63,208 bases of DNA, filler included, from Octopus bimaculoides (GCF_001194135.2; 3 parts of 3 records of this genome joined end to end with filler, not necessarily neighbours in it); one strand, 5' to 3'; positions 40,565 to 62,284 are shown, numbered from the whole stretch's first letter. Numbers and translations: made by a program. The notes: generated from the letters alone by a model not told the origin.

Positions 40565-42450
40565 ATCATCATCATCATCGTTTAACGTCCACTTTCCATG
40601 CTGGATTGGGTTGGACGGTTTGACTGAGGACTGGCGATCCAGATGGCTACACCAGGATTCAATCTGATCTGACAGAGTTTCCACAGCTGCGCACCCTTCC
40701 TAACGACAATCAGTCCGAGAGCGTGGTGGTTGCTTTTATGTGCCACCGGCATCAGGGCCAGTCAGATGGTACTCGCGACAGCCTAGCTCAAATGGTGTTT
40801 CTTTATATGCAACCTGCACAAGAGCCAGTCCAGCGGCACTGTCAATGACACCGCTCGAATTTTGTTTTTCACCTTCCACCGAAACAAGTGCTAGTAAGGC
40901 GACGCTGGTAATGATCACGGTCGAATGGAATGGTGCTTTTTATGTGCCAGGGTCACGGGAGCCACTCAGCGGCCCTGGCAATGATCACGCTCAGATGGTG
41001 CTTTTAACGTTCCACTGGCACAGATGCCAGTCAGGCGGTGCTGTCATTGGCCACGTCAACGAATTTGAATTTGATAGTGATTTCACTTGCCTCAACAAAT
41101 CTTCGCAAGCAACGCATAAGTAGGCTTGTTACACCGCAGGCATAGGCCACGGGTTATGGTTTTACTTGTCTTGCCGGGTCTTTTCAAGCACAGAATATTT
41201 CCAAATGTTTCTCACAAAATATTTCCAAAGAACCTCTACCACAGATTCCCTCAACTGCTAGGGTGTGACACTTTTTCACACAGCTGTCCTCATCCATTCA
41301 CACCACGTGTTCGCACAATTGCTGTCGTCTCTCTTGCACACCACATCTGATGCTTCTTAGGTCCTACTTTCTCAAGGTGCTTACACTCTGTCGTGTATGC
41401 ACACTGACATTACACATCCAGCGGTGCACACTGGCTTCGTTCCTTGCAAGCTTATGCATATCCTCAGCAGTTAGTGCCCATGTTTCACTGCCATGTAGCT
41501 TGGCTGTTCGTTCACATACGTCATACAGTCTACCTTTTACTCCGAGCCAGAGGCCCGTTATCACTAGCAGAGTTAATAGCTCTCTGAACTTTGCCTTGGT
41601 TATTCTTATTCTTGCAGGTACACTTTCAGAATATCCACACCCGCTGCTGACTTGGTCACTAGGTAACGGAAACTGTCAACTACTACTAGTGTTTCTCTCT
41701 GGAATGTGACAGAAGTTGTTCTCTGCACATGTCCAGTGTTTATTGCTCCTGAGAATCTGCCCCATACGTAAACTATCTTCCCAGTCAGCCTTCCTTTGAT
41801 ATCGCTGCACCTCTTATGTGTCCATATCTTGCACTGGATACATCTTATAGAGTTTCTACCTGCGCCTTTTTCTACAGATCGAGCAGGGCCATCAACATGA
41901 AGGGATTTGTGTTTTGTCTGACTTCCTACTTATTGAGACTTTGGTTTTAGCTAGGTTGACTCTAAGGCCCTTCGATTCTAATCTTTGCTTCCACACCTGA
42001 AACTTATCTAGTTCTGATAGTGACTCAGCAGTTAGAGCAAGATCATCAGCATAGAGGAACTCCCAGGACCATCCTGTCTTGAATTCCTCTGTTATTGCCT
42101 GGAGGACTATGATAAATAGGAGGGGGCTTAGGATGAACCTTGGTGGACACCTACGTCTACTTGGAATTCTTCACTGTATTCATTGTCAACACTCGCCTTA
42201 CTGACAGCGTCCCTGTACATAGTTTACACAGCCCTCACTAACCATTTATCTATCCCTAGTTTCCTCATTGACCACCAGATAAGGGATCAAGGGACCCTGT
42301 CAAAGGCTTTCTCTATATCAACGAAGGTCAGGGACAGGTGTTTATCTAGTAGTCAAGGTTCGCTAATGGGATGGTTACCTTCCCTGTCAGTATATGCAAA
42401 TGTGCTTTCTTGCAGCTCTAAGGGTTTAACTCTTATTTCTAACAATATAG
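40565..42450 (-). mobile_element. 5'-truncated RTE-clade LINE (RT, C-terminus, long 3' UTR, (GAT)n tail)
   Basis: Minus strand FVDIEKAFDRVP (about 42300-42325), GVHQG..LSPLLFIIVLQAITEEFKTGWSWEFLYADDLAL (YADD at 42042-42053), and GSETWAL. It ends GGAAAGTGGACGTTAAACGATGATGATGAT. Frameshifts and stops are present. Confidence 0.92.
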
Positions 42451-45832: not shown

Positions 45833-46454
45833 AATTTACTGACTTATTTGAGGCAACACTAAAAATAAATAATGTGATTCATAACTTTATAGTAACAAAG
45901 CATTCAATGAAACAACGTAGTGACCGTCAACAACAACGAAACTATTTTTAATGAGTATGCGCACAATATTAAGATTTCTTGAACATGCTGAAGAAACTGT
46001 GGATACAAATCATTTGTAATAAATGGTTGTGACCTATATTCTCCTCAATGTTTCTAGTTGAAAACACGATCTCACACCCAAAGTGAATATCGAAGATCTA
46101 GGGCGTACTTTTAAAGCATCCTAAGTTTTCTTTTATAGAAAGTTGAATAAGGCTTTTGAAGAAAAGTCGGATATTATAATTCAGGACTGAAAATATGTGT
46201 ATCTCATACACTCACTCTTGCATACATAAGTACATATATATGTGCATATATNNNNNNNNNNNNNNNNNNNNNNNNNNNNNNNNNNNNNNNNNNNNNNNNN
46301 NNNNNNNNNNNNNNNNNNNNNNNNNNNNNNNNNNNNNNNNNNNNNNNNNNNNNNNNNNNNNNNNNNNNNNNNNNNNNNNNNNNNNNNNNNNNNNNNNNNN
46401 NNNNNNNNNNNNNNNNNNNNNNNNNNNNNNNNNNNGTGAGACTCAATGTATTCA

Positions 46455-46724
46455 GTAGGCCGATGTCAGCGCCGTCCGAGTGGCTCCCGTGCCGGTGGCA
46501 CGTAAATAGCACCATCTGAACGTGGTCGATGCTATTCCCCTTGCCCCGTCTGGCTCCTATGTCGGTCGCACGTAAAAAGCACCCACTACATTCTCGGAGT
46601 GGTTGGCGTTAGGAAGGGCATCCAGCTGTAGAAACACTGTCAGATCAGATTGGAGTTTGGCTTACTAGACCCCAGTCAAGCCGTCCAACCCATGCCAGCA
46701 TAAAAAAGCTGACGTTAAATGACG

Positions 46725-46756
<32 letters not shown>

Positions 46757-46757
46757 G
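46455..46757 (+). mobile_element. 3' UTR fragment of the same RTE family as 40565
   Basis: GTGCCGGTGGCACGTAAATAGCACC, CTCGGAGTGGTTGGCGTTAGGAAGGGCATCCAGCTGTAGAAAC, GACGTTAAATGACGATGATGAT. Confidence 0.88.
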
Positions 46758-48329
46758 TTTTTCTTCTTATTTATGGATGTTGCAGTTTGTGTGTGTAATC
46801 TCCCGCGGTGGAAGTGTTGATAATTGCTAGCTCTAGTTGAGTATCGAGGGAGCTCTCTCAATAATACTCCATTGATTTTTCATTCCGGTGGTCACGGAGT
46901 CGCCAGATAATACAGAGTAGGGAGAGGGAGTTTTTCCAATCCTCATACCTCAAAGAGTGCATATGCCGTCTATAAATATACCTTGTAGACATTGGCTATC
47001 ATATTCGAGTAATGCCGTGCAATGGAAGCGGATGTGGGCGAGCCGCGTAGCAAAGTGGTCTAGACGATCCTTTCCATTTTGAAGGGTGGCTTTTTCCTTC
47101 ACTTCAGTGTTTGTGTCGTTATATGCAGAGGTGTTTGTTTTCTTGATATTTTGGTGATTGTATTTGTATCAAGTTTTGTAGTAGTGGAAATCTTCATTTC
47201 AAACATGGTTTTTATTTTCAGACGACGATGTGTAGATTAGGTGACTGTTTCATTCGTGCCATGTAATTGTTTAAAGAGTGCAGAAATGGGTTAATGATGA
47301 TGAAATCTTGTTCAACCTGTCCATTAAGTCAACTTCAAAACTCTCAGCGTACTTCATCTGGGGAAGACAATTTCATGATTTAAAGCCCAACCTAGCTCTG
47401 TGTAGGCAGGTAGACAGATTCTCAAAGCATTATGCCTTCGAACGCATGCGCCAGATGACGCTTTTTTGTTGTCTAGTTGAGGAGCATTAAATAAAGTTCT
47501 CTTATTGGTATTTCGATGTCTTACAAAGAGTACTGTAGATGCTACTCTCCATTATAAACCGTTTATCCGTCGTTTGCGGATGGAGGACAAAAGATTTTGA
47601 AATGTGAACTCACATGAATTGAAAAATGAAACAAAATGTCACTGTACACATTTGATTGGAATTACATGTATTATGTAATAACAATTTGACTCAGTTTCAT
47701 GCAATTTAATATTTCGTTGGATTGTAAAATGAAGCAAACTGGCCAAGTATTAGTAGATCATGTCACAATAAATTAGACAATTTCAAGATGGTTTTCTGAT
47801 TTTAGGCCTGTATTAGTTAAGTTCACATAGTGTAATCGGTTTTCAAATTATATTAGTTCTTATTCTTTGTTCTGACAGCGACGTGGTCTGCCAGGGTGTT
47901 TGTCGATATGATACACGTACTTTCATGCATACATACACATACGCACACACATACACTCACACACACATATGCCCGTGTCGGTATACTTCATATTTAGCGT
48001 TCTAACAAACTAGACACGTATATTGAGCACTCATCTTCTTAGAAAGCTGTACTAAATACGCTGATGTACATAATATATGTATAGTCTAACAAATGTTATG
48101 GGCTGAAGCATGGAACGGGGCAGTGGACGATGCGAAAATAATAAAGCTTATAATCATGAAATCGTAAAATATATAAGGGCATTTCGCACTAATATATACA
48201 AGTTGTTAATATGGTAATGCTAATACTGATTGTAGCAGCAAAACAGAAGCCTTAAAATAATGTTCAAATGTGTAAAATAACATAAGTGATGAAAATTACT
48301 GTCATATTTAAATATCGTTAAGTATTTCG

Positions 48330-49760
48330 TGAATGCTATGTTAATGAACATTATAATATTGAAAAAAAAGGAAAGAGAAGATATTTCTATATTTTTAATG
48401 TCCAGTGGACGTTTATTAAGAAAGTGGATGGCATTTGGACTAACAAATAATAAAATGTTGGATATAAAATGTTATTTAAAAATTAAATATTAATTAATGT
48501 TGTTTAGTTTAACTCTGTAGTGTAGTCTACGTTTTGTAATTTATTTCCTATACGTCTATTATTTCGAGATTATGGAGGAGAGTACATAGTGATGTAAAAC
48601 AAGAGAGTATGTTACAGCAGTAAATAACAACGACAAAGTAAGAAGATAAACGGTGAAGAGATATGTCAGTTAATATTACCTTAAGGAAATACAATATGTG
48701 TGGATATTTAGATAAAATACACTAATGATAAGAATAATATTGAGATAGAAATAATGTAGATATTTGTTCGTTCTTCCTAAGGTAAAATTGACGTTTGAAA
48801 AAGTTGTTGAAAAATATAGAGTTTAAAAACTAAAAGATAAAACAAATCTATAGTGGAGAAATTAAGACTAAATAAATGTTGCAGGGCGAGAAGGTGAAGT
48901 GGATAACTGTTTAAGAAACAATGTTAAAGGTTAAAAAGCGAAAAAAAAAAAATGAAAATAATCTAAGAGATAATAGTTATAGGTAAGACAACATAGGCTA
49001 GAAAGTCACTACGTAAAAGCTGTTTGTTATATACCTGTGGACTAAGTGTTGGGATAATTACGAAGGTGGAAATGAATAAAACAACAAGTTATGAGGAAAA
49101 GGCGGATAGATATGAAGAGGTGTAGAATACAAAAGGAAGAAAAGAAGAATATAAGGAAGAATAGAGACAGATGAGAGAGAAAAGGTTTATGATGAGGATG
49201 ATATGAACGTATGGATAAGAATTCTGTGAGTGCTATATTTCAAAATTAGGTAATGCTAGCAGTTGACTTACAGGGCTATAGGAGTAAAACGAAAGAATTT
49301 GAAAAAAAAGTACTATTATATAAATTGGAAAATTTGAGAGTCGATATAAAAATAAATTAGAACATGTTTGCTGGAAAAATGGGAGACAGGAAAAAGTAGA
49401 ATTTTTTTAAATAACGAGGTTATAAAGTAGAGTGATCGATGGCACAGATTACAGAGTTAAAGTGGTTGTAACAGGTAAAAGAATAAGCTAGAGATAAGCT
49501 AAAATATAATTTTTTTAAATGTGAAATAATTAATAATTCTATAAAATATAACATTGTGCAAAAAATATTTATTATGAAGATAATAATAATAGTTCTAAGC
49601 AAGAAGGATGAGTTCTATTCTTTTGTGGTGGTGGCAGTGGTGGTGGTAGTGATTGTGGACTTTAGAATGGTTATGAGAAAATAAGGTAAAGCATATTTAA
49701 GAAATGCGTGAAGTAAATGTTATTAGAGGCAGTGAAAGGATTTGAAGTATGCATACGGTT
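48330..49760 (+). mobile_element. Possible very old LINE remnant (A/G-rich, strand-biased)
   Basis: Strong purine bias with only faint endonuclease-like peptides such as RVDIK and GTDYRVKVVV; not assignable. Confidence 0.25.
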
Positions 49761-50082
49761 TTAAATATCATGAGCGTATGTAAACAACGACTTCGGATGT
49801 CTGTTTAAATGAAGTTTTCTAAGCTACTAGCATATGAAAGCATTCTTTGTGAAATCCACAAATATTTCTATCTCCAATGTAGTGTTAGGCTCTTTTTAAA
49901 ATATCTTAGCTTCGGCTTCTTGGTGCATACTTGGTTTTCAGACGAAAATATGGCTTCTGATAGTCGTAGTTTTTCTATATGTTCAAAACGTAACCTGTGC
50001 CGGCTTTATCTTGCCGTGGAGCTGATAATGTGTAAGATAGATTTCATTGGTTTACTTGGCAATATATATTTACATGTATAAA

Positions 50083-50358
50083 GCGGCGAGCTGGCAGAAA
50101 TGTTAGCACGCCGGGCGAAATACTTACCGGTATTTCGTCTGTCTTTATGTTCTGAGTTCAAATTCCACCGAGGTCGACATTGCCTTTCATCCTTTCGGGG
50201 TCGATAAATTAAGTACCAGTTACGCACTGGGGTCCATGTAATCGACTTAATCCCATTGCTTGTCCTTGTTTGTCCCCTCTATGTTTAGCCTCTAGTGGGC
50301 AATAAAGAAATAAGAAACGTTAGCAAGCCGGGTGAAATGCTTGGCGGTATTTCGTCTC
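50083..50358 (+). mobile_element. SINE family B, well preserved, followed by a second truncated head
   Basis: GCGGCGAGCTGGCAGAAATGTTAGCACGCCGGGCGAAATACTTACCGGTATTTCG...GAGTTCAAATTCCACCGAGGTCGAC...GGCAATAAAGAAATAAGAAACGTTAGCAAGCCGGG. Confidence 0.9.
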
Positions 50359-50359
50359 C

Positions 50360-51930
50360 GTGAGTTTACTGATCGGACGTGTTATTACTTCCGTCGTCCC
50401 AGGCCTGCTGAAGCAAAATGAAATACATTGCAATGAAGACATGACTGAGAAGGTTGGAAAATATAAAGAAATGATAAGGAAGGAGGGGTCAAACGTAAAG
50501 TTGACCCCATCAGAGGAGGAAAGAACAAAGATGAAATTTGGAGGCGTGGAATATACATCATTTTCAAGGAAAAATACAAGAATAGAGAGTGCAACGAAGG
50601 AGGAGGTGGAGGAGTGTTTGAAGGAATTGCAAGAAGATGTGTCGTTTTTTACAAGAAGCAAGACATACGCGTCTGTAGAGATCATATTTGTATCGGAGGA
50701 GGCAGCAAAAAATACGCCAATAAAACACTAGCCAAAGGAAATTGGATGCTCTTTCCCAATAACTTGGGTAGACGTCCAACGTGGATTAGAGTGGGTAGGA
50801 TACCACCGAAAATAGAGTTGGAATGGGTAATGGCAGCAGTATTTCCTGAAGGAGAAGAAGATGTAAGGATAATTATGATAAACAGAACCCAACAAATAAA
50901 TTGTTGGGGGTATGAATTAGAGGTACTTTTTATGGCAAGTCCGAAAGTTTACAGTGGCATACCGGAGACACTGGAACTGCCTAACGAGGACAAAGTGGGC
51001 ATAATGTTGGAGGGGAGACCTCCAAAGTGCTACGAATGTGGCAAAAGAGGTCACATTAGAAGAAGGTTCCCAGAAATAATGGAAAACAAAGAAATGGAAA
51101 CGCAAGAAGGCGCGATAGAGGAGAGGAAACAGTTACAGGAAGAGCAGCAGATAGCTGATTTTGAGGAAGCAAAATCTAGGAAGACAGAAAGGAGGAGCTC
51201 ATCGCCGATAGTCGAACAAGGGAAAAAATACAAACAACAGGATCAAGTGGGAACATTGAGGAAAGAGGATAATAACAGAACATTACCACAGAACCATACA
51301 ATCTCACAATCGCACAGACAGAAAGATACACAGATGCATAAACACACAGACATACATACACTCGGAAGAGTAGAAGATAACGCAGAGTTGCAGAAACCTA
51401 AAAGCACAGAACCTGAAAACACAGACACACAAACACAACATGCAGACCCACCGACAGATAAACACGCAAATATACAGTCGCAAAGAAATATAGAAGAACA
51501 GATGCATGGTAGTACAGAATCACAAAATCCAAGAAAACAAACATACAGACGCAGGAGGTACATAATAACGGTACATATTTGATGTCATATCGATATACAC
51601 AATAAATAGAAAAGAAGATATCCAAAATAAAACACATTGTCAAAGTGAACCACTCGGACGGTTGCAATAAGGAGATGAGATGGATTTTAACAGAAAATGA
51701 AAAGTATAAAAAATTAAAAGAGGCTTTCCCGACAGATATAAACGCATTGGGGCCCGAGGTGAATTTCGAACCCGGCGCCCCAGTGGTGACCTACGAGGAA
51801 ATAAAAGATTATATCAAATGGTGAGTAGTTTTATTTTGGATAAATTATTGAGAGACTTTTGAAAAGAACTATCGAAGACTGTGAAAGGAACTATTAAGAA
51901 CTGCTGAAATAATTGAAATAACGCGGCCGC
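50360..51930 (+). mobile_element. Tx1/L1-type ORF1 (gag-like, RRM region plus zinc knuckle) element with no visible ORF2
   Basis: ORF 50441-50731 continues after a single-base slip in the A run near 50708 into TLAKGNWMLFPNNLGRRPTWIRVGRIPP...IMLEGRPPKCYECGKRGHIRRRFP (knuckle 51028-51069, last Cys changed to Phe), then a Q/T/H-rich tail to 51582. Confidence 0.75.
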
Positions 51931-52039
51931 CCCGGGTTCGCCATCCCATCATCATTGTTTAATTTCATTGTTCCAGTATATCATGTGTTAATTGTCTCCG
52001 CATGTGTGTATTGTCCAATCTGTGTTTAGCCCCCCGTGA

Positions 52040-52455
52040 GCAATTAAGAAATTGGTATTTCGTCCGTCTTTATGTTTTGAGTTCAAATTCCGCCCAGTCG
52101 ATCGACTTTGCCTTTCATCCTTTTGGGGTCTATAAATTACGTGTCAGTTGCGTACTGGGGTCGTTCCAATCGACTGCCCACCACAAAAAAAAAGAAAAAA
52201 ATTCGGGCCTTGTGCCTAGAGTAGAAAAGAATATATATTTACATGTATAACGCGCAGTAGTGGTAGGAACGTTGGGATGCCGGGAAAATGCTTGACGACA
52301 TTTAGTCTACGTTCTGAGTTCAAATTCCATCAAGGTCGACATTGCCTTTCATATATTCGGTGTCGATAAAGTACAAGTTGTTCTCTGAAGATCGATGTAA
52401 TCGACTTATCCCCTTCACTGTCATTTCTGGCCTTATGCCAAAATTTGGAACCCAT
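52040..52455 (+). mobile_element. Two tandem SINE family B copies
   Basis: GAGTTCAAATTCC core at about 52080 and 52316, each followed by GTCGAC(T/A)TTGCCTTTCAT. Confidence 0.85.
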
Positions 52456-53169
52456 ATACATTTACATGTATAGTACAACAATGGATACGTAATTTAGTAG
52501 CAAACCTATAGGACACCTGTAAATAAGAAAGACAGTGATTTTGGTTTGAATTCTACAACACTACATAGGCGAAATGCAACCATGAAATGATATAAGTAGA
52601 AATTCGATATTATATATATCTGCCATAAATCCAATGACGCGTAAGTAGAGCTAACTCACTAGCTAATTTTTAAAAGCATATCTTCATATAGTATCTACCT
52701 CACGGATTTAAAATAACCGTATCGTGTTATATTCGTAAAGGAGTACCCAAAACATAAAAAAACTTAGTACTATCACTTGAAATTTATTAATATCATATTC
52801 ATCATAGAGAAATGATCAGGTGTGAAGTAAAAAATCGCTCACTCTCTTATACCACTATATTTTCCAACAAGCAAAATTTGCTTCCCTCAGTTCAAGCAGC
52901 CAATAAATTTTGATTAAGCATACTTAAAATTTGCAAAGAATATATATAAATTTAAATATGGAATGATGTCACCAAGTCCGTGATATCGTTATGGTTGAAG
53001 ATAAAGGAGAACGATTACAGATACTCCACCAGGCAGAAGTGTAGTAGTGCAAGGGTGAGTTTCGACAAGAATCATTGATTCTGAATCGTAACCTCAGTTG
53101 TATTTCCAGCCAATTTCACAAGCTCCGATGCTGAAAGAAGCGATGGTATAATCTCATATGATATACTAC

Positions 53170-53330
53170 ATGTCGATTGTAACTAAATATTATATAAATT
53201 GGGCTGAAGATAATATGAAATTTAAGGATTCTAAATTTCAAATGCATCGCTATCAATTAATGAGTTCATCGCAACCATGGACACATAGGTTTGGGAGAAA
53301 AATGTTTGACGAGGTGGTCAATGTGTGTAA
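53170..53330 (+). mobile_element. Short CR1/L2-like RT remnant inside the TIR element
   Basis: YINWAEDNMKFKDSKFQMHRY resembles the WAxxNxMxFNxxKFxxLxY RT motif. Confidence 0.35.
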
Positions 53331-53956
53331 TGAGACATTTTCCATGGGTATATTATTAAAGCCAGAACAATGGGCAGGTGACCGGAGGGATGTTTCGTAG
53401 GTCATTCCGAACGACTAAAAGTTATGTCACGTTTTATTTCCTTCGTCTCATTTTCAAAAGTTTATTCTTAGTTATGGTCGTCATATTCTATCTAACTAAC
53501 GAGAGAACTTGAAGAAATCCGACGCTGCCTTAGGGAGAAAGTCATTGCGATACAATAGAAGTAGAATGGGAAGAGCGTCAGCACAAACAGGAGAAATATG
53601 AAATTATATATATATGGTAAAGGTGGCTTATTCGCATGTTATAACCAAAAGGCAGATATATAGACATCATTAAAGTGACTAAGAGTACTAGACAGCAACA
53701 GTACTGCTAGAAGTGAGAGTGAAAGCAACTCATAGCCATAGAAAGCGCTTATCATTATGATTGACGTGGGACGCAAGCGCCTACATCCAGGACATAGCCA
53801 GATCACCAGTGATTTTGCATTTCATTAATGCCCGTCAGTGGCTCTTACCTGGCCTAGGGTTAAACTTGCCTTGTCAGTTTATAAGACGACCGTAGAAATC
53901 GCACGCCGATTTCATAAATGGTAAAAGTGAAAATTATAAATAGTAAAGGTGGCTTA

Positions 53957-54257
53957 TCTTAATATATAAAGCTGAAGTTGTGTGTCTGTGTAAAGCCTTT
54001 TTAAAAGTGTATAGAAATCCACATTTTCCACTTTTTCCTAAAAAATATTACATCAATGGAATTTTCTCGATGTGAACTTTCCAGTGCAGTAATTAGATTT
54101 TTTAAATTCCGTTTACTTTGTGTGATTTAAGGGAGATTTGACTGTTGTTTCTAACAACTTTTATATTTCTTGTCTTCTACCTGGAACAGCGTTCTTACAC
54201 ACGCGTTCAACATATAATATAGAAATTAAGAGTAAAAGAGGGAGATAGAGAGAGAGA

Positions 54258-54305
<48 letters not shown>

Positions 54306-55988
54306 NNNNNNNNNNNNNNNNNNNNNNNNNNNNNNNNNNNNNNNNNNNNNNNNNNNNNNNNNNNNNNNNNNNNNNNNNNNNNNNNNNNNNNNNNNNNNNN
54401 NNNNNNNNNNNNNNNNNNNNNNNNNNNNNNNNNNNNNNNNNNNAGTGATACATACAAAGTCATAGATTAAACTTTCCTCTCGGTATTCTTTACCTATTTT
54501 TCATAACATTGTTACGTAAAAACACACACAACCACACATACGTGATCTGTGACAAAAACAACAACATTGCTCTCGTTCTCTATTCCTTTCTTCCCCTCTT
54601 CCTCTCTCGCTCTCTCAAACGCAGACACGTGCAAGTAAACACAATCATTCACAAAAGTATAACTCATGTTCGTCAATGTGGCTTAACTACAGAGTTGTAC
54701 CCGCCGACTTTGGAAGGTCATAACTTTCAGAAAAATGAATATTTTTTAATGAAATTTTCTATGCATATATTATTTATTATGTAGATTCCGAATAAACAAA
54801 AAGAATTGGTGATAGTGTTTTAGGAGGGGGGTTGGACAATTTTCGCAAATTCCACTTAAATTCCTTTTAACTTTAACTTTTAACTTTAATATTTTTTTCG
54901 TGAAATTTTCTACAAATATACCTTGATGTATGTACATTTGAAGCATATAGGAATTTTGAAGGAAACAACTGCAGGTTATTTTTGAGAAGTGTTCCCCACT
55001 CGGTCGTGTTTCGGAGCAAGTCGTCCATATTTGTTTCATTTTCTCTATTATAGGCTTCTGTGTATCTGTAGATTTCTAATGAAGTGATAGGCAGTGAAGA
55101 GAAGACGTCATAAGAAAACTTTTAACTACCTCTATTCCTTTCTCCCTCTCTATCTACCTCTTCCTCTCGCGCTCTCTCGAACGCATACACGTGCAAGTAT
55201 ACAATCATTCAATAAAATATATCTCATATTCGTCAATGTTTTGTAAATATATCACCATTTTCACTAGGGTGTTAGGGTTAGGGTTTTAGGGTCAGGGTTA
55301 GGGTTTTAGGGTTAGAGCTAGGGCTTAAGGTTAGTGTTAGGGTTAGTGCTAGGATTAGGTTTAGGCTTAGGAGTGGGTAATCGTGCGGGAGTTAATCTGA
55401 AAAATTACAGATATGTGAAAAGAACCGACCCTGTCATCTATTATAACTTTTGTTGTTCTGTTTAATATATATATATAGATTATGCCTCCAAAGAAGTCAG
55501 TTTGCAGGGGAAAGACAGTAACCGGTTTAAAATGACAGCAACAGACTGCAGCAATTCACCACATTCCAGAAGCTACTTTGAACACAATGCAAAATGGTGC
55601 ATCAACATCTTCTGCCCAATCTGATAGAATTCTTGCAAAACTGTGTAGCAACAGATTGCCGGCAATTGCTTCATCACAAATTGCCGTCCTAGCCCCTGTG
55701 AAAAGGGATTACCCGGCTATGTATAATCAGGGCAGCGCAAACAGTTTTTTTGCACAAGCATTTCTATAGCCAATTAGACGGATGAAATTTACGTGCGCTT
55801 AAAATTTTACGCAAAACAGCCTTCAGACTTTCCCTATTAATTTCATCGTCTTTTGAATTATGAACATATTTACACCATAAGGGTTGTTTCGTTGTAAGGC
55901 TTTCTGTTTTAGTTGATTTTCACCAAGCAAGACTTATCGTACATGGCGTAATAAGTCACACCCGGACAAGGTCAGGTTATACTGCTAG
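53957..55988 (+). mobile_element. Non-autonomous Helitron nested in the TIR element
   Basis: The 5' end TCTTAATATATAAAGCTGAAG follows A at 53956. The 3' end has an imperfect hairpin ACCCGGAC-AAG-GTCAGGT (55960-55977), a 7-nt spacer and CTAG (55985-55988), followed by T. Insertion between A and T without a TSD is canonical. Confidence 0.7.
55265..55375 (+). repeat. Degenerate interstitial (TTAGGG)n-like array
   Basis: TTAGGGTTAGGGTTTTAGGGTCAGGGTTAGGGTTTTAGGGTTAGAG..., decaying to the right. Confidence 0.9.
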
Positions 55989-56022
55989 TTCACAATATAA
56001 GCGTGCGCATGTGTGTGTTTGT

Positions 56023-56024
<2 letters not shown>

Positions 56025-56092
<68 letters not shown>
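56025..56092. repeat. (TG)n microsatellite
   Basis: Direct. Confidence 0.95.
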
Positions 56093-56097
<5 letters not shown>

Positions 56098-57495
56098 GTG
56101 CTTGCGTTGGTGTGTCCGTTTAAATGTTAGCGGGCGAAAGAAACGGTACATAGCAGAAGTTGATATTTTAATTTTTATTTAGCTCCGTCAAACTCTTGCT
56201 GTTCTAAGGTTCGCCTGTTGGTGCTGAGTCTTTAGGTAAGTTCTCAGTTTTTGGAAGTTTCTGTGAACATACAAGTGTAACTCAGTGTAGGAAGATCTGC
56301 CACGAAAAAAGTGAAACAGTATTATATATACATGTACATGTGTGTGTGTGTGTATACACATCACTAAAGTAACTGTGGGTGCTAGTAACGACTATACTTG
56401 TTACTTTTCATTTGTAAATTGCGAAAAGCCACATTGGTTTTATATATATTCTTTGCAAATTTTAAGTATGCTTAATCAAAATTTATTGGCTGCTTGAACT
56501 GAGGGAAGCAAATTTTTCTTGTTGGAAAATATAGTGGTATAAGAGAGTGAGCGATTTTTTACTTCACACCTGATCATTTCTCTATGCATGAGTTTGTTAG
56601 TGCGTGCGTATGTGTATGTGCGTGTGGTGTGTGCATGTCTATATGTTGAAGTTCCAAAATGACCTACAACCAAGTTTATCTTCGAAATTAAACCAATTCT
56701 CCCACTAGGCACCATTTAAAGACGGATGCTTCAACGATTTGGTGCTTCAAGGCACAAGACTACAATAACATGTTGAAGAGCTGTGAGATATATAAAGTGT
56801 GGATGTATATGAATTAAAGGTATCTGGATTTTGTATTATCAGAAATCCTAGATCAACCTAACCAAATGAGATAATTCAAATCAGGATATGTCCTTGGTAG
56901 TGTGCCTCGAGAGCACGTTCGCCACATACGGCTGTCAGGTATCATCTACGGTACTGCACTTTAGTCGTGAGACCTACGTAAGTAATATGTCGGTGCACGT
57001 TTAGTATATTCTACATAATTCAGAGGGAAGACAAAAAGTGTACTGCTAGCTTTATGTAGCATGACGGTCATTTCGCTGACTTCTGCATTACTCCCTAGTG
57101 GGTGGGAAACAATATAATGAAATCGAATGAACTCCACAGTGCAGAAGAAACCTAATCAGGTTACATAAATTACGGTGTTATAATAAGTAAATTTCGCTAC
57201 TGTATGTGGCAGGATGGTGTTGTTAGGATGCGTTCATAGTAGTTCGCAAATCCATTGACGAGGTAAGTTGTTTGGTATGTGTTCGTTGACTGGTGAGTAA
57301 ATGATACAAAGAATCAAATACAAAGTATAAATGTAATGGTCAGAATGGCTTTTGAATGAAAAACGCTCAAAACGTCATGGAGTTCATCAGTGGTTGGTTA
57401 TGCGTAACATTCGTCGCAACGTGGGTATACATATACACTCATACATGTATATGCATTTATATATAAACACACAAACATGCACATATATGTATATA

Positions 57496-57545
<50 letters not shown>

Positions 57546-61410: not shown

Positions 61411-62170
61411 GTTCCATCCGGACATCTAAATCTGGAGGGCTGTTTGAACGAATTGGAAGAAGATGTGTCGTTTTTCACAAGAGGCAAGACATACGCGTCT
61501 GTAGGGATCACGTATCGGGGGAGGTAACAAGGAAATACGTCAATAACGCATTAACTGTAGAAAACTGGATGCTCTTTCCCAATCAACTGAGTAGACGTCC
61601 AACGAGGATAAGGGCGGATAGGATCCCGCTGAAAATAGAGCCACAATTCGTAATGGCAGCAATTTTTTTGTGGAAAAAAAGAATAAGTAAATGTAGTTAT
61701 GATAATCAGAACCCAACAAATAAATTGCTGGGCGATAGTTTGGAGGTGGTTTTTCACGGCAAATCAGACAGTATGCAATACCATACCGGGGACACTGGAA
61801 TTCCCAAACGAGGAAGGCTATGAATGTAGTAAAAGAGGTCAAATTAGAATGAGGTGTCCAGAAATAATGGAAAACATAGAAATGGAATCGCAGGAAGGCG
61901 TGATAGAGGAGAGGAAACAGACACAGTGAGAGGAACAAGGAAGCTAAGTCAAGGAAGAGAGAAAGCAGGAGCTCATCGCCGAAAGTTGAACAAAGAAACA
62001 ACTATAAATCACAGGATCAAGTGGGATCACTGAGGAAAAAGTATAAAAGCAGAACATCACCAAAGAAACATACAGACACACAATCGCACAAACACACGTA
62101 TTCACCGGCGGATTAGCACACAGGCATACATACACACGGAAGCGTAAAAGATACCATAGAGTTGCACAAA
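61411..62170 (+). mobile_element. Decayed paralogue of the 50360 ORF1 element
   Basis: GAAGAAGATGTGTCGTTTTTCACAAGAGGCAAGACATACGCGTCTGTAG and TGGATGCTCTTTCCCAAT...AGACGTCCAACG are close to 50633-50781; colinear through GGAGCTCATCGCCGA. Confidence 0.85.
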
Positions 62171-62284
62171 CTAAAATACTGAAGAACTTTACATGCTAAA
62201 TACCAATTTCCAGCCATACTCCGAGGCGAACAGTGACTTCCCTTTTCCTTTTCACATTACAATTTTAAAGAAAAAGTTTTTAAA

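What the first reader, a model, noticed from the sequence alone, without database searches (positions are those of the whole stretch)
52803..56586. 3.8-kb element bounded by near-identical 148-bp TIRs and a CAT target duplication
Seen: a long inverted repeat with about one mismatch, CATAG termini and an exact 3-bp direct flank. There is no transposase inside, only passenger DNA: a LINE scrap, a Helitron, microsatellites and a telomere-like array. The ends look far younger than most repeats here. Inference: a recently mobile non-autonomous cut-and-paste element carrying cargo. CATAG ends with a 3-bp TSD fit neither Tc1/mariner (TA) nor hAT (8 bp). Academ or a CMC-group superfamily are candidates, but the sequence alone does not decide it.
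Basis: partly seen in the sequence, partly recalled or inferred. Interest (0 to 1): 0.7.

Follow-up and report, generated by a model that had tools for sequence, protein, structure and literature searches.

The report
Non-autonomous DNA transposon copy in octopus
A 3.8-kb stretch of what is probably an octopus genome is bounded by two almost identical 148-base inverted repeats and a 3-base duplication, so it is most likely one young, protein-less copy of a cut-and-paste transposon, which is an ordinary kind of thing in octopus genomes.

Summary
Arms 52803-52950 and 56439-56586 are inverted repeats with 147 of 148 bases matching. They start with CATAG and are flanked by a direct CAT on each side. 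Shuffled sequence gives inverted matches of at most 20 bases, and a chance 3-base match has p of about 0.02.

No reading frame in the 3.5-kb interior matches any Pfam family or any protein in the large collections. This confirms there is no transposase. The microsatellites and the degenerate telomere-like array are real.

The best reading is a single non-autonomous TIR transposon of unclassified superfamily with a 3-bp target duplication. It probably inserted within the last few million years.

Three caveats apply:
- The two arms lie on different contigs joined across the N gap, which follows an (AG)34 run. Continuity could not be tested.
- No other copy of the arm could be found, because no cephalopod genome is reachable with these tools. 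Mobility, copy number and target-duplication length are therefore inferred from one locus.
- Moving the boundary 4 bases inward gives a TA duplication, the Tc1/mariner type that dominates octopus genomes.

Young TIR elements, including unclassified families, are already documented in Octopus vulgaris, so interest is low.

The parts
52800..52802 (.). Left copy of CAT, the putative 3-bp target-site duplication
   Evidence: Identical to 56587-56589 and directly abuts the left arm. Chance p = 0.020.
52803..52950 (+). Left terminal inverted repeat, 148 nt, starting CATAGAGAAATGATCAGG. It is 30% GC and contains AAAATTTGC twice (positions 71 and 124) and near-palindromes
52951..56438 (.). Interior of 3488 nt including the gap. 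It is non-coding, with 37.5% GC like the flanks, and has no transposase, reverse-transcriptase or helicase remnant
   Evidence: Six-frame Pfam found nothing. The 80-aa ORF searched against 1.84 billion representatives gave only an artefact. All stop-free stretches of at least 35 aa (microsatellite-coded runs and the two terminal-repeat frames left out) gave no hit at E <= 0.001. No tRNA was found, and no Rfam match apart from one weak chance-level snoRNA match.
53617..53957 (+). Probable nested retroposon-like insertion. Exact 15-bp direct repeats GTAAAGGTGGCTTAT (53617-53631 and 53943-53957) flank 311 bp that end in an A-rich run
   Evidence: families D9 and D13. The identity of the insert was not determined.
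54237..54305 (.). (AG)34.5 microsatellite that runs into the gap
54306..54443 (.). Assembly gap of 138 N (length estimated) that separates the contigs carrying the two arms
   Evidence: Continuity is not testable here.
54578..54679 (+). Copy 1 of a short repeat of about 105 nt, with a CT-rich head followed by ...CGTGCAAGT...TTCGTCAATGT
   Evidence: 80% identical to 55130-55239
55130..55239 (+). Copy 2 of the same short repeat
55271..55371 (+). Degenerate telomere-like array: GTTAGG, 16 units, 73% matches
56010..56093 (.). (TG)42.5 microsatellite
56439..56586 (-). Right terminal inverted repeat, 148 nt, with 147/148 bases matching the left arm
56587..56589 (.). Right copy of CAT, the putative target-site duplication

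Best explanation
This is one copy of a non-autonomous class II (TIR, cut-and-paste) transposon in a cephalopod genome, most likely an octopus. Its superfamily is unclassified.

Inferred mechanism: a transposase encoded elsewhere in the genome binds the two 148-bp terminal inverted repeats, excises the whole 3.8-kb unit and inserts it at a target cut with a 3-nt stagger. Repair of that stagger produced the flanking CAT/CAT duplication.

The interior encodes nothing. It is either family-specific filler or captured genomic DNA, complete with its own older microsatellites, short repeats, a telomere-like array and a nested retroposon-like insertion.

Age is also inferred. If the arms were identical at insertion, one difference in 148 nt, with the octopus calibration of JC 0.09 = 25 My, puts the insertion at roughly 1 My ago. 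The Poisson range is about 0.02-5 My.

Shown directly: the TIRs, the 3-bp direct flanks, the absence of coding capacity, and the age contrast with neighbouring repeats. Inferred: mobility, trans-mobilisation, the 3-nt stagger, the age, and that the two arms are physically linked as scaffolded.
For: - Arms match at 147/148 bases and have sharp outer and inner ends. Shuffles give inverted matches of at most 20 nt.
- The direct CAT sits exactly at the ends of the inverted repeat, with chance p = 0.020.
- Counting free bases at the junction, the 3-bp model is about 64 times more likely than either 'no duplication' or the TA model.
- Neither arm has a duplication of its own between its outer and inner flanks, so the arms are not two self-contained insertions.
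- The two interior halves share no similarity, so this is not two adjacent copies.
- No coding remnant exists in any frame.
- Other repeat pairs in the piece are 70-87% identical, against 99.3% for the arms.
- The host is an octopus-like genome. The neighbouring ORF's only good hit is an Octopus bimaculoides protein, at E = 3.9e-67.
- Curated O. vulgaris annotation lists 963 TIR families, of which 123 are unclassified. It lists 238 recently active TIR families (49 unclassified) with 3243 insertions. Such an element is therefore expected.
- Superfamilies with 2-4-bp duplications (CMC, PIF-Harbinger-ISL2EU, Academ) are annotated in octopus. Their duplication lengths are given in PMC10045372.
Against: - There is only one locus. 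No second copy of the arm occurs in the 29-kb piece or in any reachable collection, so repetitiveness and a consistent duplication length are untested.
- The arms sit on different contigs joined by a gap.
- The CATAG terminus matches no superfamily signature that I could verify.
- The duplicated CAT is not the TWA that I recall as typical of PIF/Harbinger, and CATAG is not the CAC(TA) that I recall for CMC.
- Among recently active octopus TIR insertions, CMC contributes 1 of 3243 and Academ and PIF none. A known 3-bp superfamily is therefore unlikely a priori, and the element would have to belong to the 'unclassified TIR' group.
Confidence: 0.62

Rival explanations
1. The element is the same kind of thing, a single non-autonomous TIR transposon, but of the Tc1/mariner type. 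The true ends lie 4 nt further in (TIR starts GAGAAATG) and the duplication is TA. The two extra complementary bases (CA/TG) and the direct CAT would then be coincidences.
For: - Trimming 4 nt gives an exact TA on both sides.
- Tc1-Mariner is by far the largest TIR superfamily in octopus, with 362 families and 119 Mb. It supplies 1553 of the 3243 recently active TIR insertions. This gives prior odds of roughly 10-20:1 over families with 3-bp duplications.
- Positions 14-34 of the arm resemble the Mos1 mariner 3' ITR (sequence from PMC2642840). Only 51 of 5000 shuffles reach that score.
Against: - It needs a 2-nt extension of the inverted repeat (1/16) and a 3-nt direct repeat (about 1/50-1/64) by chance. 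The net likelihood ratio is about 64:1 against it relative to the CAT model.
- GAGAAATG is not a usual Tc1/mariner start (my recollection, not tested).
- The mariner-like motif begins 13 nt inside the repeat and is not preceded by TA.
- The resemblance is post hoc and marginal.
Confidence: 0.13
2. This is not one mobile unit. The arms are two separate pieces of a dispersed repeat that landed in opposite orientation 3.5 kb apart, or a local inverted duplication of a 148-bp segment made by replication template switching. The CAT match is chance or microhomology, and the interior is ordinary resident DNA.
For: - The interior looks like ordinary octopus non-coding DNA. It has the same GC content as the flanks and carries microsatellites, old short repeats and a nested insertion.
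- A 3-bp match has p = 0.02, which is small but not negligible.
- No family-level evidence exists.
Against: - Both arms end at exactly the same inner and outer positions and are 99.3% identical.
- Neither arm has its own flanking duplication or a tail typical of a retroposon copy.
- Neither arm has internal terminal inverted repeats of its own, which a self-contained MITE would have (sequence).
- The CAT lies exactly at the outer ends.
Confidence: 0.12
3. This is a scaffolding or assembly artefact. The two arms belong to copies at different loci, or the 3.1-kb right-hand contig is misplaced or misoriented. The 3.8-kb 'element' would then not exist as drawn.
For: - The arms are on different contigs joined by an N run that follows a microsatellite.
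- The piece has 7 gaps in 29 kb, typical of a short-read scaffold.
- A 148-nt near-identical repeat is about the length at which short-read assemblers mis-thread.
Against: - Each arm lies well inside its contig, 1.35 kb and 2.0 kb from the gap, with unique sequence on both sides.
- The assembler kept the single difference between the arms.
- The matching CAT flanks appear only in the present orientation.
Confidence: 0.08

Closest known systems
Unclassified non-autonomous TIR elements of octopus genomes (the 'Unclassified TIR' class in the curated O. vulgaris annotation, PMC13282606)
   Same: The host lineage is the same. Both have TIR-bounded structure, no transposase and low divergence. That annotation lists 49 unclassified TIR families with 871 recently active insertions.
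   Different: Whether this family is one of them could not be checked, because no library sequences are available. At 3.8 kb it is larger than a typical MITE.
CMC (CACTA-Mirage-Chapaev) superfamily
   Same: Its short target duplication of 2-4 bp includes 3 bp. It is present in all molluscs surveyed, including cephalopods, and has 22 families in O. vulgaris. Capture of host DNA by non-autonomous members is known (my background knowledge).
   Different: The terminus here is CATAG, not CAC(TA). No subterminal repeat arrays were seen beyond the arms. Only 1 recently active CMC insertion is recorded in O. vulgaris. No transposase is available to place it.
AcademX lineage of Academ, and Zator
   Same: AcademX makes 3-4-bp duplications and Zator makes 3-bp duplications (PMC10045372).
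   Different: Academ, Zator and Kolobok are reported as almost restricted to bivalves among molluscs. O. vulgaris has only 0.2 Mb of Academ and no Zator listed. I could not verify their terminal motifs.
PIF/Harbinger (PHIS group)
   Same: Duplications are 0-4 bp, typically 3 bp. There are 46 families in O. vulgaris.
   Different: The duplicated triplet here is CAT, not the TWA that I recall as usual for the superfamily. No recently active PIF insertions are listed.
Tc1/mariner non-autonomous elements with long TIRs
   Same: This is the dominant TIR superfamily in octopus. A TA reading is possible. A weak mariner-ITR-like motif lies inside the arm.
   Different: It requires two coincidences at the junction. 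The motif is 13 nt from the end and lacks an adjacent TA.

Membership tests
Class II TIR (cut-and-paste) transposon, non-autonomous | Terminal inverted repeats with sharp ends | tested here: met
   148 nt, 147/148 bases matching, with sharp inner and outer boundaries
Class II TIR (cut-and-paste) transposon, non-autonomous | Target-site duplication directly abutting both ends | tested here: met
   CAT/CAT, p = 0.020 by chance, at one locus only
Class II TIR (cut-and-paste) transposon, non-autonomous | Several copies in the genome with different flanks, and an autonomous relative sharing the ends | not testable with these tools
   No cephalopod genome is reachable. There is no second copy in the piece, and the collections returned nothing or only chance 18-19-mers
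Class II TIR (cut-and-paste) transposon, non-autonomous | No functional transposase inside (non-autonomous) | tested here: met
   The gap, estimated at 138 nt, is too short to hide one unless the estimate is badly wrong
hAT | 8-bp target-site duplication | tested here: not met
   No exact duplication longer than 3 bp at any boundary trimmed by 0-8 nt
Tc1/mariner | TA target-site duplication directly abutting the TIR | tested here: inconclusive
   TA is present only if the ends are moved 4 nt inward. The junction likelihood is about 64:1 against, but the prior in octopus is strongly in favour
Tc1/mariner | Terminal transposase-binding sequence like known family ITRs | tested here: inconclusive
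   A Mos1-ITR-like motif lies at arm positions 14-34. Its score is reached by 51/5000 shuffles, and it is offset 13 nt from the end
CMC (CACTA-Mirage-Chapaev) | 2-4-bp target-site duplication | tested here: met
   3 bp
CMC (CACTA-Mirage-Chapaev) | CAC(TA)-type terminal motif (from my background knowledge) | tested here: not met
   The terminus is CATAG
CMC (CACTA-Mirage-Chapaev) | CMC-type DDE transposase | not testable with these tools
   There is no transposase in the element and no autonomous partner is retrievable
PIF/Harbinger | 3-bp duplication, usually TWA (the preference is from my background knowledge; the length is from PMC10045372) | tested here: inconclusive
   The length fits, but the sequence CAT does not fit TWA
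Academ (AcademX) / Zator | 3-4-bp (AcademX) or 3-bp (Zator) duplication | tested here: met
   3 bp
Academ (AcademX) / Zator | Superfamily-specific transposase and termini | not testable with these tools
   There is no coding sequence, and the terminal signatures could not be verified. Both superfamilies are scarce in cephalopods
piggyBac | TTAA duplication | tested here: not met
   No TTAA at either junction
Mutator / Merlin / P | 7-10-bp duplication | tested here: not met
MITE | Miniature size (under about 800 bp) | tested here: not met
   3784 bp including a gap estimated at 138 nt
Foldback elements | Long arms built of tandem subrepeats | tested here: not met
   TRF finds no tandem array in either arm
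   No Pfam hit in six frames and no homologue of any stretch of at least 35 aa searched. DNA-level similarity to TE libraries is not testable here

The most novel reading that the evidence does not exclude
The copy belongs to a previously undescribed, currently active cephalopod TIR family. Its features would be CATAG termini, 148-bp TIRs with internal AAAATTTGC sites, and a 3-bp duplication with no TWA preference. Its transposase would fall outside the superfamilies now annotated in octopus, and it would pick up and move kilobases of host DNA.
Probability: 0.08. Interest if true: 0.45.

Novelty: new member of a known kind. Interest (0 to 1): 0.18.

Why it matters
If confirmed, this is one more young DNA-transposon insertion in an octopus genome. 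It would also be a handle (the 148-bp end) for finding its family, its autonomous partner and its duplication length. It could serve as a presence/absence marker between individuals or sister species, and as an example of a TIR element carrying non-coding cargo.

It does not open a new question. A curated O. vulgaris annotation already reports thousands of recently active TIR insertions, including 49 unclassified TIR families.

Tried and rejected
1. Other copies of the arm:
- A peptide encoded by the arm, searched against 5.8 billion protein clusters, found nothing (a first 36-aa query was too short; the 40-aa query is).
- A 29-mer in JGI metagenomes found nothing.
- The terminal 18-mer gave 10 hits in metagenomes, 5 in bacterial genomes and 0 in viral contigs. 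All hits match only 18-19 nt exactly (one extends to 24 nt at 92% identity), so they are chance.
- A full-text search for the terminal 15-mer in papers found nothing.

2. Reaching octopus genomic DNA:
- The O. bimaculoides homologue P0001 and P0002 are not on record as genes.
- Ten window ORFs are not in the protein collection.

3. Coding content of the interior:
- X-masked six-frame Pfam gave only GA-microsatellite noise, namely Atrophin-1 and DUF3915 matches below their cut-offs.
- The 80-aa ORF 53158-53397 gave one hit that is an artefact of a 10-fold tandem-repeat protein.
- The concatenated stop-free stretches gave nothing.

4. RNA genes: no tRNA was found, and Rfam gave only sub-threshold noise, none of it in the arms.

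5. Alternative boundaries: trims of 0-8 nt give only CAT (trim 0), AT (trim 3) and TA (trim 4). No 4-, 5-, 6-, 8- or 9-bp duplication exists.

6. Arms as independent insertions: neither arm has its own flanking duplication.

7. A third, inverted copy of the short CT-headed repeat left of the gap: only low-complexity similarity was found.

8. A disrupted ORF at the joined flanks: none is longer than 51 aa.

9. Terminal-motif tables for superfamilies: these were not retrievable from the papers tried.
Full report
**1. Observation**

Arms 52803-52950 and 56439-56586 are 148 nt long and differ at one position (52872 C; the reverse complement of 56517 gives A), with 3488 nt between them. The longest exact inverted match in the piece is 78 nt, which is the longer of the two exact blocks either side of that mismatch. 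In 20 shuffles of the piece the longest is 14-20 nt.

The left junction reads ...ATATTCAT|CATAGAG and the right reads CTCTATG|CATGAGTTTG. The arms therefore start with CATAG and are flanked by a direct CAT. Two random triplets of this piece are equal with probability 0.020.

The inner boundary is as sharp as the outer one, with no shared 9-mer beyond position 148. The piece 34223-63208 contains no other copy of the 148-mer.

**2. The gap**

The N run 54306-54443 follows directly on an (AG)34.5 microsatellite, and the sequence restarts in unique DNA. Nothing coding is at stake, so 'in frame' is not an issue. Continuity cannot be tested, because no other assembly or reads of this organism are reachable.

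The gap still matters. The piece has seven gaps. The left arm lies in contig 46436-54305 and the right arm in contig 54444-57545. Their linkage, spacing and relative orientation therefore depend on scaffolding.

Three facts argue for the scaffold as drawn:
- Each arm is 1.35-2.0 kb from the gap with unique sequence on both sides.
- The assembler preserved the one difference between the arms.
- The CAT flanks match only in this orientation.

**3. Host**

The only substantial ORF nearby (50614-51582, with a weak CCHC knuckle) has one good hit among 5.8 billion protein clusters. That hit is an uncharacterised Octopus bimaculoides protein (47% identity, E = 3.9e-67). Together with the microsatellite-rich, AT-rich, gap-ridden sequence, this points to an octopus or close relative. 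The species is not established.

**4. Interior**

Six-frame translation, with stops masked, has no Pfam match other than low-complexity noise from the GA microsatellite.

The longest ORF (53158-53397, 80 aa) was scored against 1.84 billion representative proteins. It matched only a bacterial-type tandem-repeat protein through ten summed weak stretches, which is an artefact.

All stop-free stretches of at least 35 aa in all six frames were concatenated into 2273 aa, leaving out microsatellite-coded runs and the two terminal-repeat frames. None found a protein at E <= 0.001. No tRNA was found. Rfam gave only sub-threshold matches, and none lies in the arms.

There is also no protein-level trace of the 'LINE scrap' or 'Helitron'.

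The features that are present:
- (AG)n at 54237-54305 and (TG)n at 56010-56093.
- A degenerate telomere-like GTTAGG array at 55271-55371.
- A repeat of about 105 nt at 54578-54679 and 55130-55239, 80% identical.
- An exact 15-bp direct repeat (53617-53631 and 53943-53957) around a 311-bp stretch with an A-rich end, which looks like a nested retroposon insertion.

Interior GC content (37.5%) equals that of the flanks (36-39%). The arms are 30% GC.

**5. What it is**

The anatomy is that of a single non-autonomous TIR transposon.

Alternatives at the junction were enumerated. Trimming the ends by 0-8 nt gives exact duplications only of CAT (no trim), AT (trim 3) and TA (trim 4). Nothing of 4-9 bp appears, which excludes hAT, piggyBac, Mutator, Merlin, P, Transib and similar.

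Counting free bases at the junction gives these comparisons:
- The CAT model explains the 20 junction bases with 10 free bases.
- The TA model needs 13 free bases, a likelihood ratio of about 64 in favour of CAT.
- 'No duplication' also needs 13 free bases.
- The AT model needs 14.

Priors pull the other way for TA. In the curated O. vulgaris annotation, Tc1-Mariner supplies 1553 of 3243 recently active TIR insertions. CMC supplies 1 and Academ and PIF supply none, while 'unclassified TIR' supplies 871. I therefore keep about 13% for a Tc1/mariner reading.

A post hoc resemblance between arm positions 14-34 and the Mos1 3' ITR (sequence taken from PMC2642840) is reached by 1% of shuffles. However, the motif lies 13 nt inside the repeat and has no adjacent TA. 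I treat it as a lead only.

The arms are not two independent insertions. They share both boundaries exactly, and neither has its own flanking duplication. Neither arm's own ends are inverted repeats of each other, as a self-contained MITE's would be (sequence). Two adjacent full elements with their partner ends hidden in the gap is also unlikely, because the two interior halves share no similarity.

**6. How it most likely works (inferred)**

A transposase encoded elsewhere recognises the arms. The arms contain AAAATTTGC twice and near-palindromes around it, which are possible binding sites. The transposase excises the unit and integrates it at a 3-nt staggered cut.

The cargo's own repeats are 73-80% conserved while the arms are 99.3% identical. 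Every other repeat pair in the piece is 70-87% identical. The interior is therefore much older than the last move. It was either carried along or is the family's standard filler.

The calibration quoted for octopus is JC 0.09 = 25 My and JC 0.2 = 56 My. With it, one difference in 148 nt between arms that started identical gives about 1 My, with a Poisson range of roughly 0.02-5 My. That is far younger than the 25-My TIR burst. The estimate assumes that the source copy's arms were identical and that no gene conversion occurred.

**7. Comparison with known families**

Superfamilies with short duplications are Zator (3 bp), AcademX (3-4 bp) and the PHIS/Harbinger group (0-4 bp), all per PMC10045372, plus CMC (2-4 bp, from my background knowledge).

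In molluscs, Academ, Zator and Kolobok are reported as nearly bivalve-restricted, while CMC, Mariner, hAT, MULE and piggyBac occur in all molluscs, including cephalopods (PMC10294476). The curated O. vulgaris table nevertheless lists CMC (22 families), PIF-Harbinger-ISL2EU (46) and Academ (48, only 0.2 Mb), along with 123 unclassified TIR families.

CATAG is not the CAC(TA) start of CMC, and CAT is not the TWA of Harbinger (both from my background knowledge). I could not verify the termini of Academ or Zator. Without a transposase the superfamily cannot be assigned, so 'unclassified TIR' is the honest label.

**8. Novelty and verdict**

A young, protein-less TIR element in an octopus genome is expected. 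Recently active TIR families, including unclassified ones, are already catalogued. It is at most a new member of a known kind, and may already sit in an existing library.

Noticed in passing
window 53617-53957: An exact 15-bp direct repeat GTAAAGGTGGCTTAT (53617-53631 and 53943-53957) flanks 311 bp that end in an A-rich run. This is probably a nested retroposon or SINE-like insertion with its own target duplication inside the element. ARAGORN finds no tRNA-like head.
   Followed up: partly
window 52816-52836 and the mirror position in 56439-56586: Arm positions 14-34 (TCAGGTGTGAAGTAAAAAAT) resemble the Mos1 mariner 3' ITR as printed in PMC2642840. The score is reached by 51/5000 shuffles. The motif is 13 nt from the end and is not preceded by TA.
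   Followed up: partly
window 54578-54679 and 55130-55239: A short repeat of about 105 nt, with a CT-rich head followed by a conserved tail ending TTCGTCAATGT, occurs twice in direct orientation at 80% identity inside the element. The GA-rich run left of the gap matches only its low-complexity head.
   Followed up: partly
window 50607-51403 and 61433-62176: A repeat of about 800 bp occurs in direct orientation at 75% identity. The first copy carries a 322-aa ORF with a weak CCHC zinc knuckle. Its only good homologue is an uncharacterised Octopus bimaculoides protein, A0A0L8HJ83. It is probably a gag-like fragment of an octopus retroelement.
   Followed up: partly
window 50061-50257, 52054-52175, 52230-52415: Three copies, 76-84% identical, of a unit of about 190 bp lie just upstream of the element. 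None reaches the insertion site, so they give no paralogous empty site.
   Followed up: no
window 40565-41052 and 46458-46735: A diverged inverted repeat pair of about 280 nt at 70% identity lies about 5.5 kb apart, and both members sit next to assembly gaps. It was not examined.
   Followed up: no
window 34223-63208: There are seven N gaps in 29 kb, and those I read through directly (54306, 57546, 58088, 58977) abut microsatellites such as AG, GT and AT runs. This is typical of a short-read scaffold, and repeat structures that span gaps should be treated with care.
   Followed up: no
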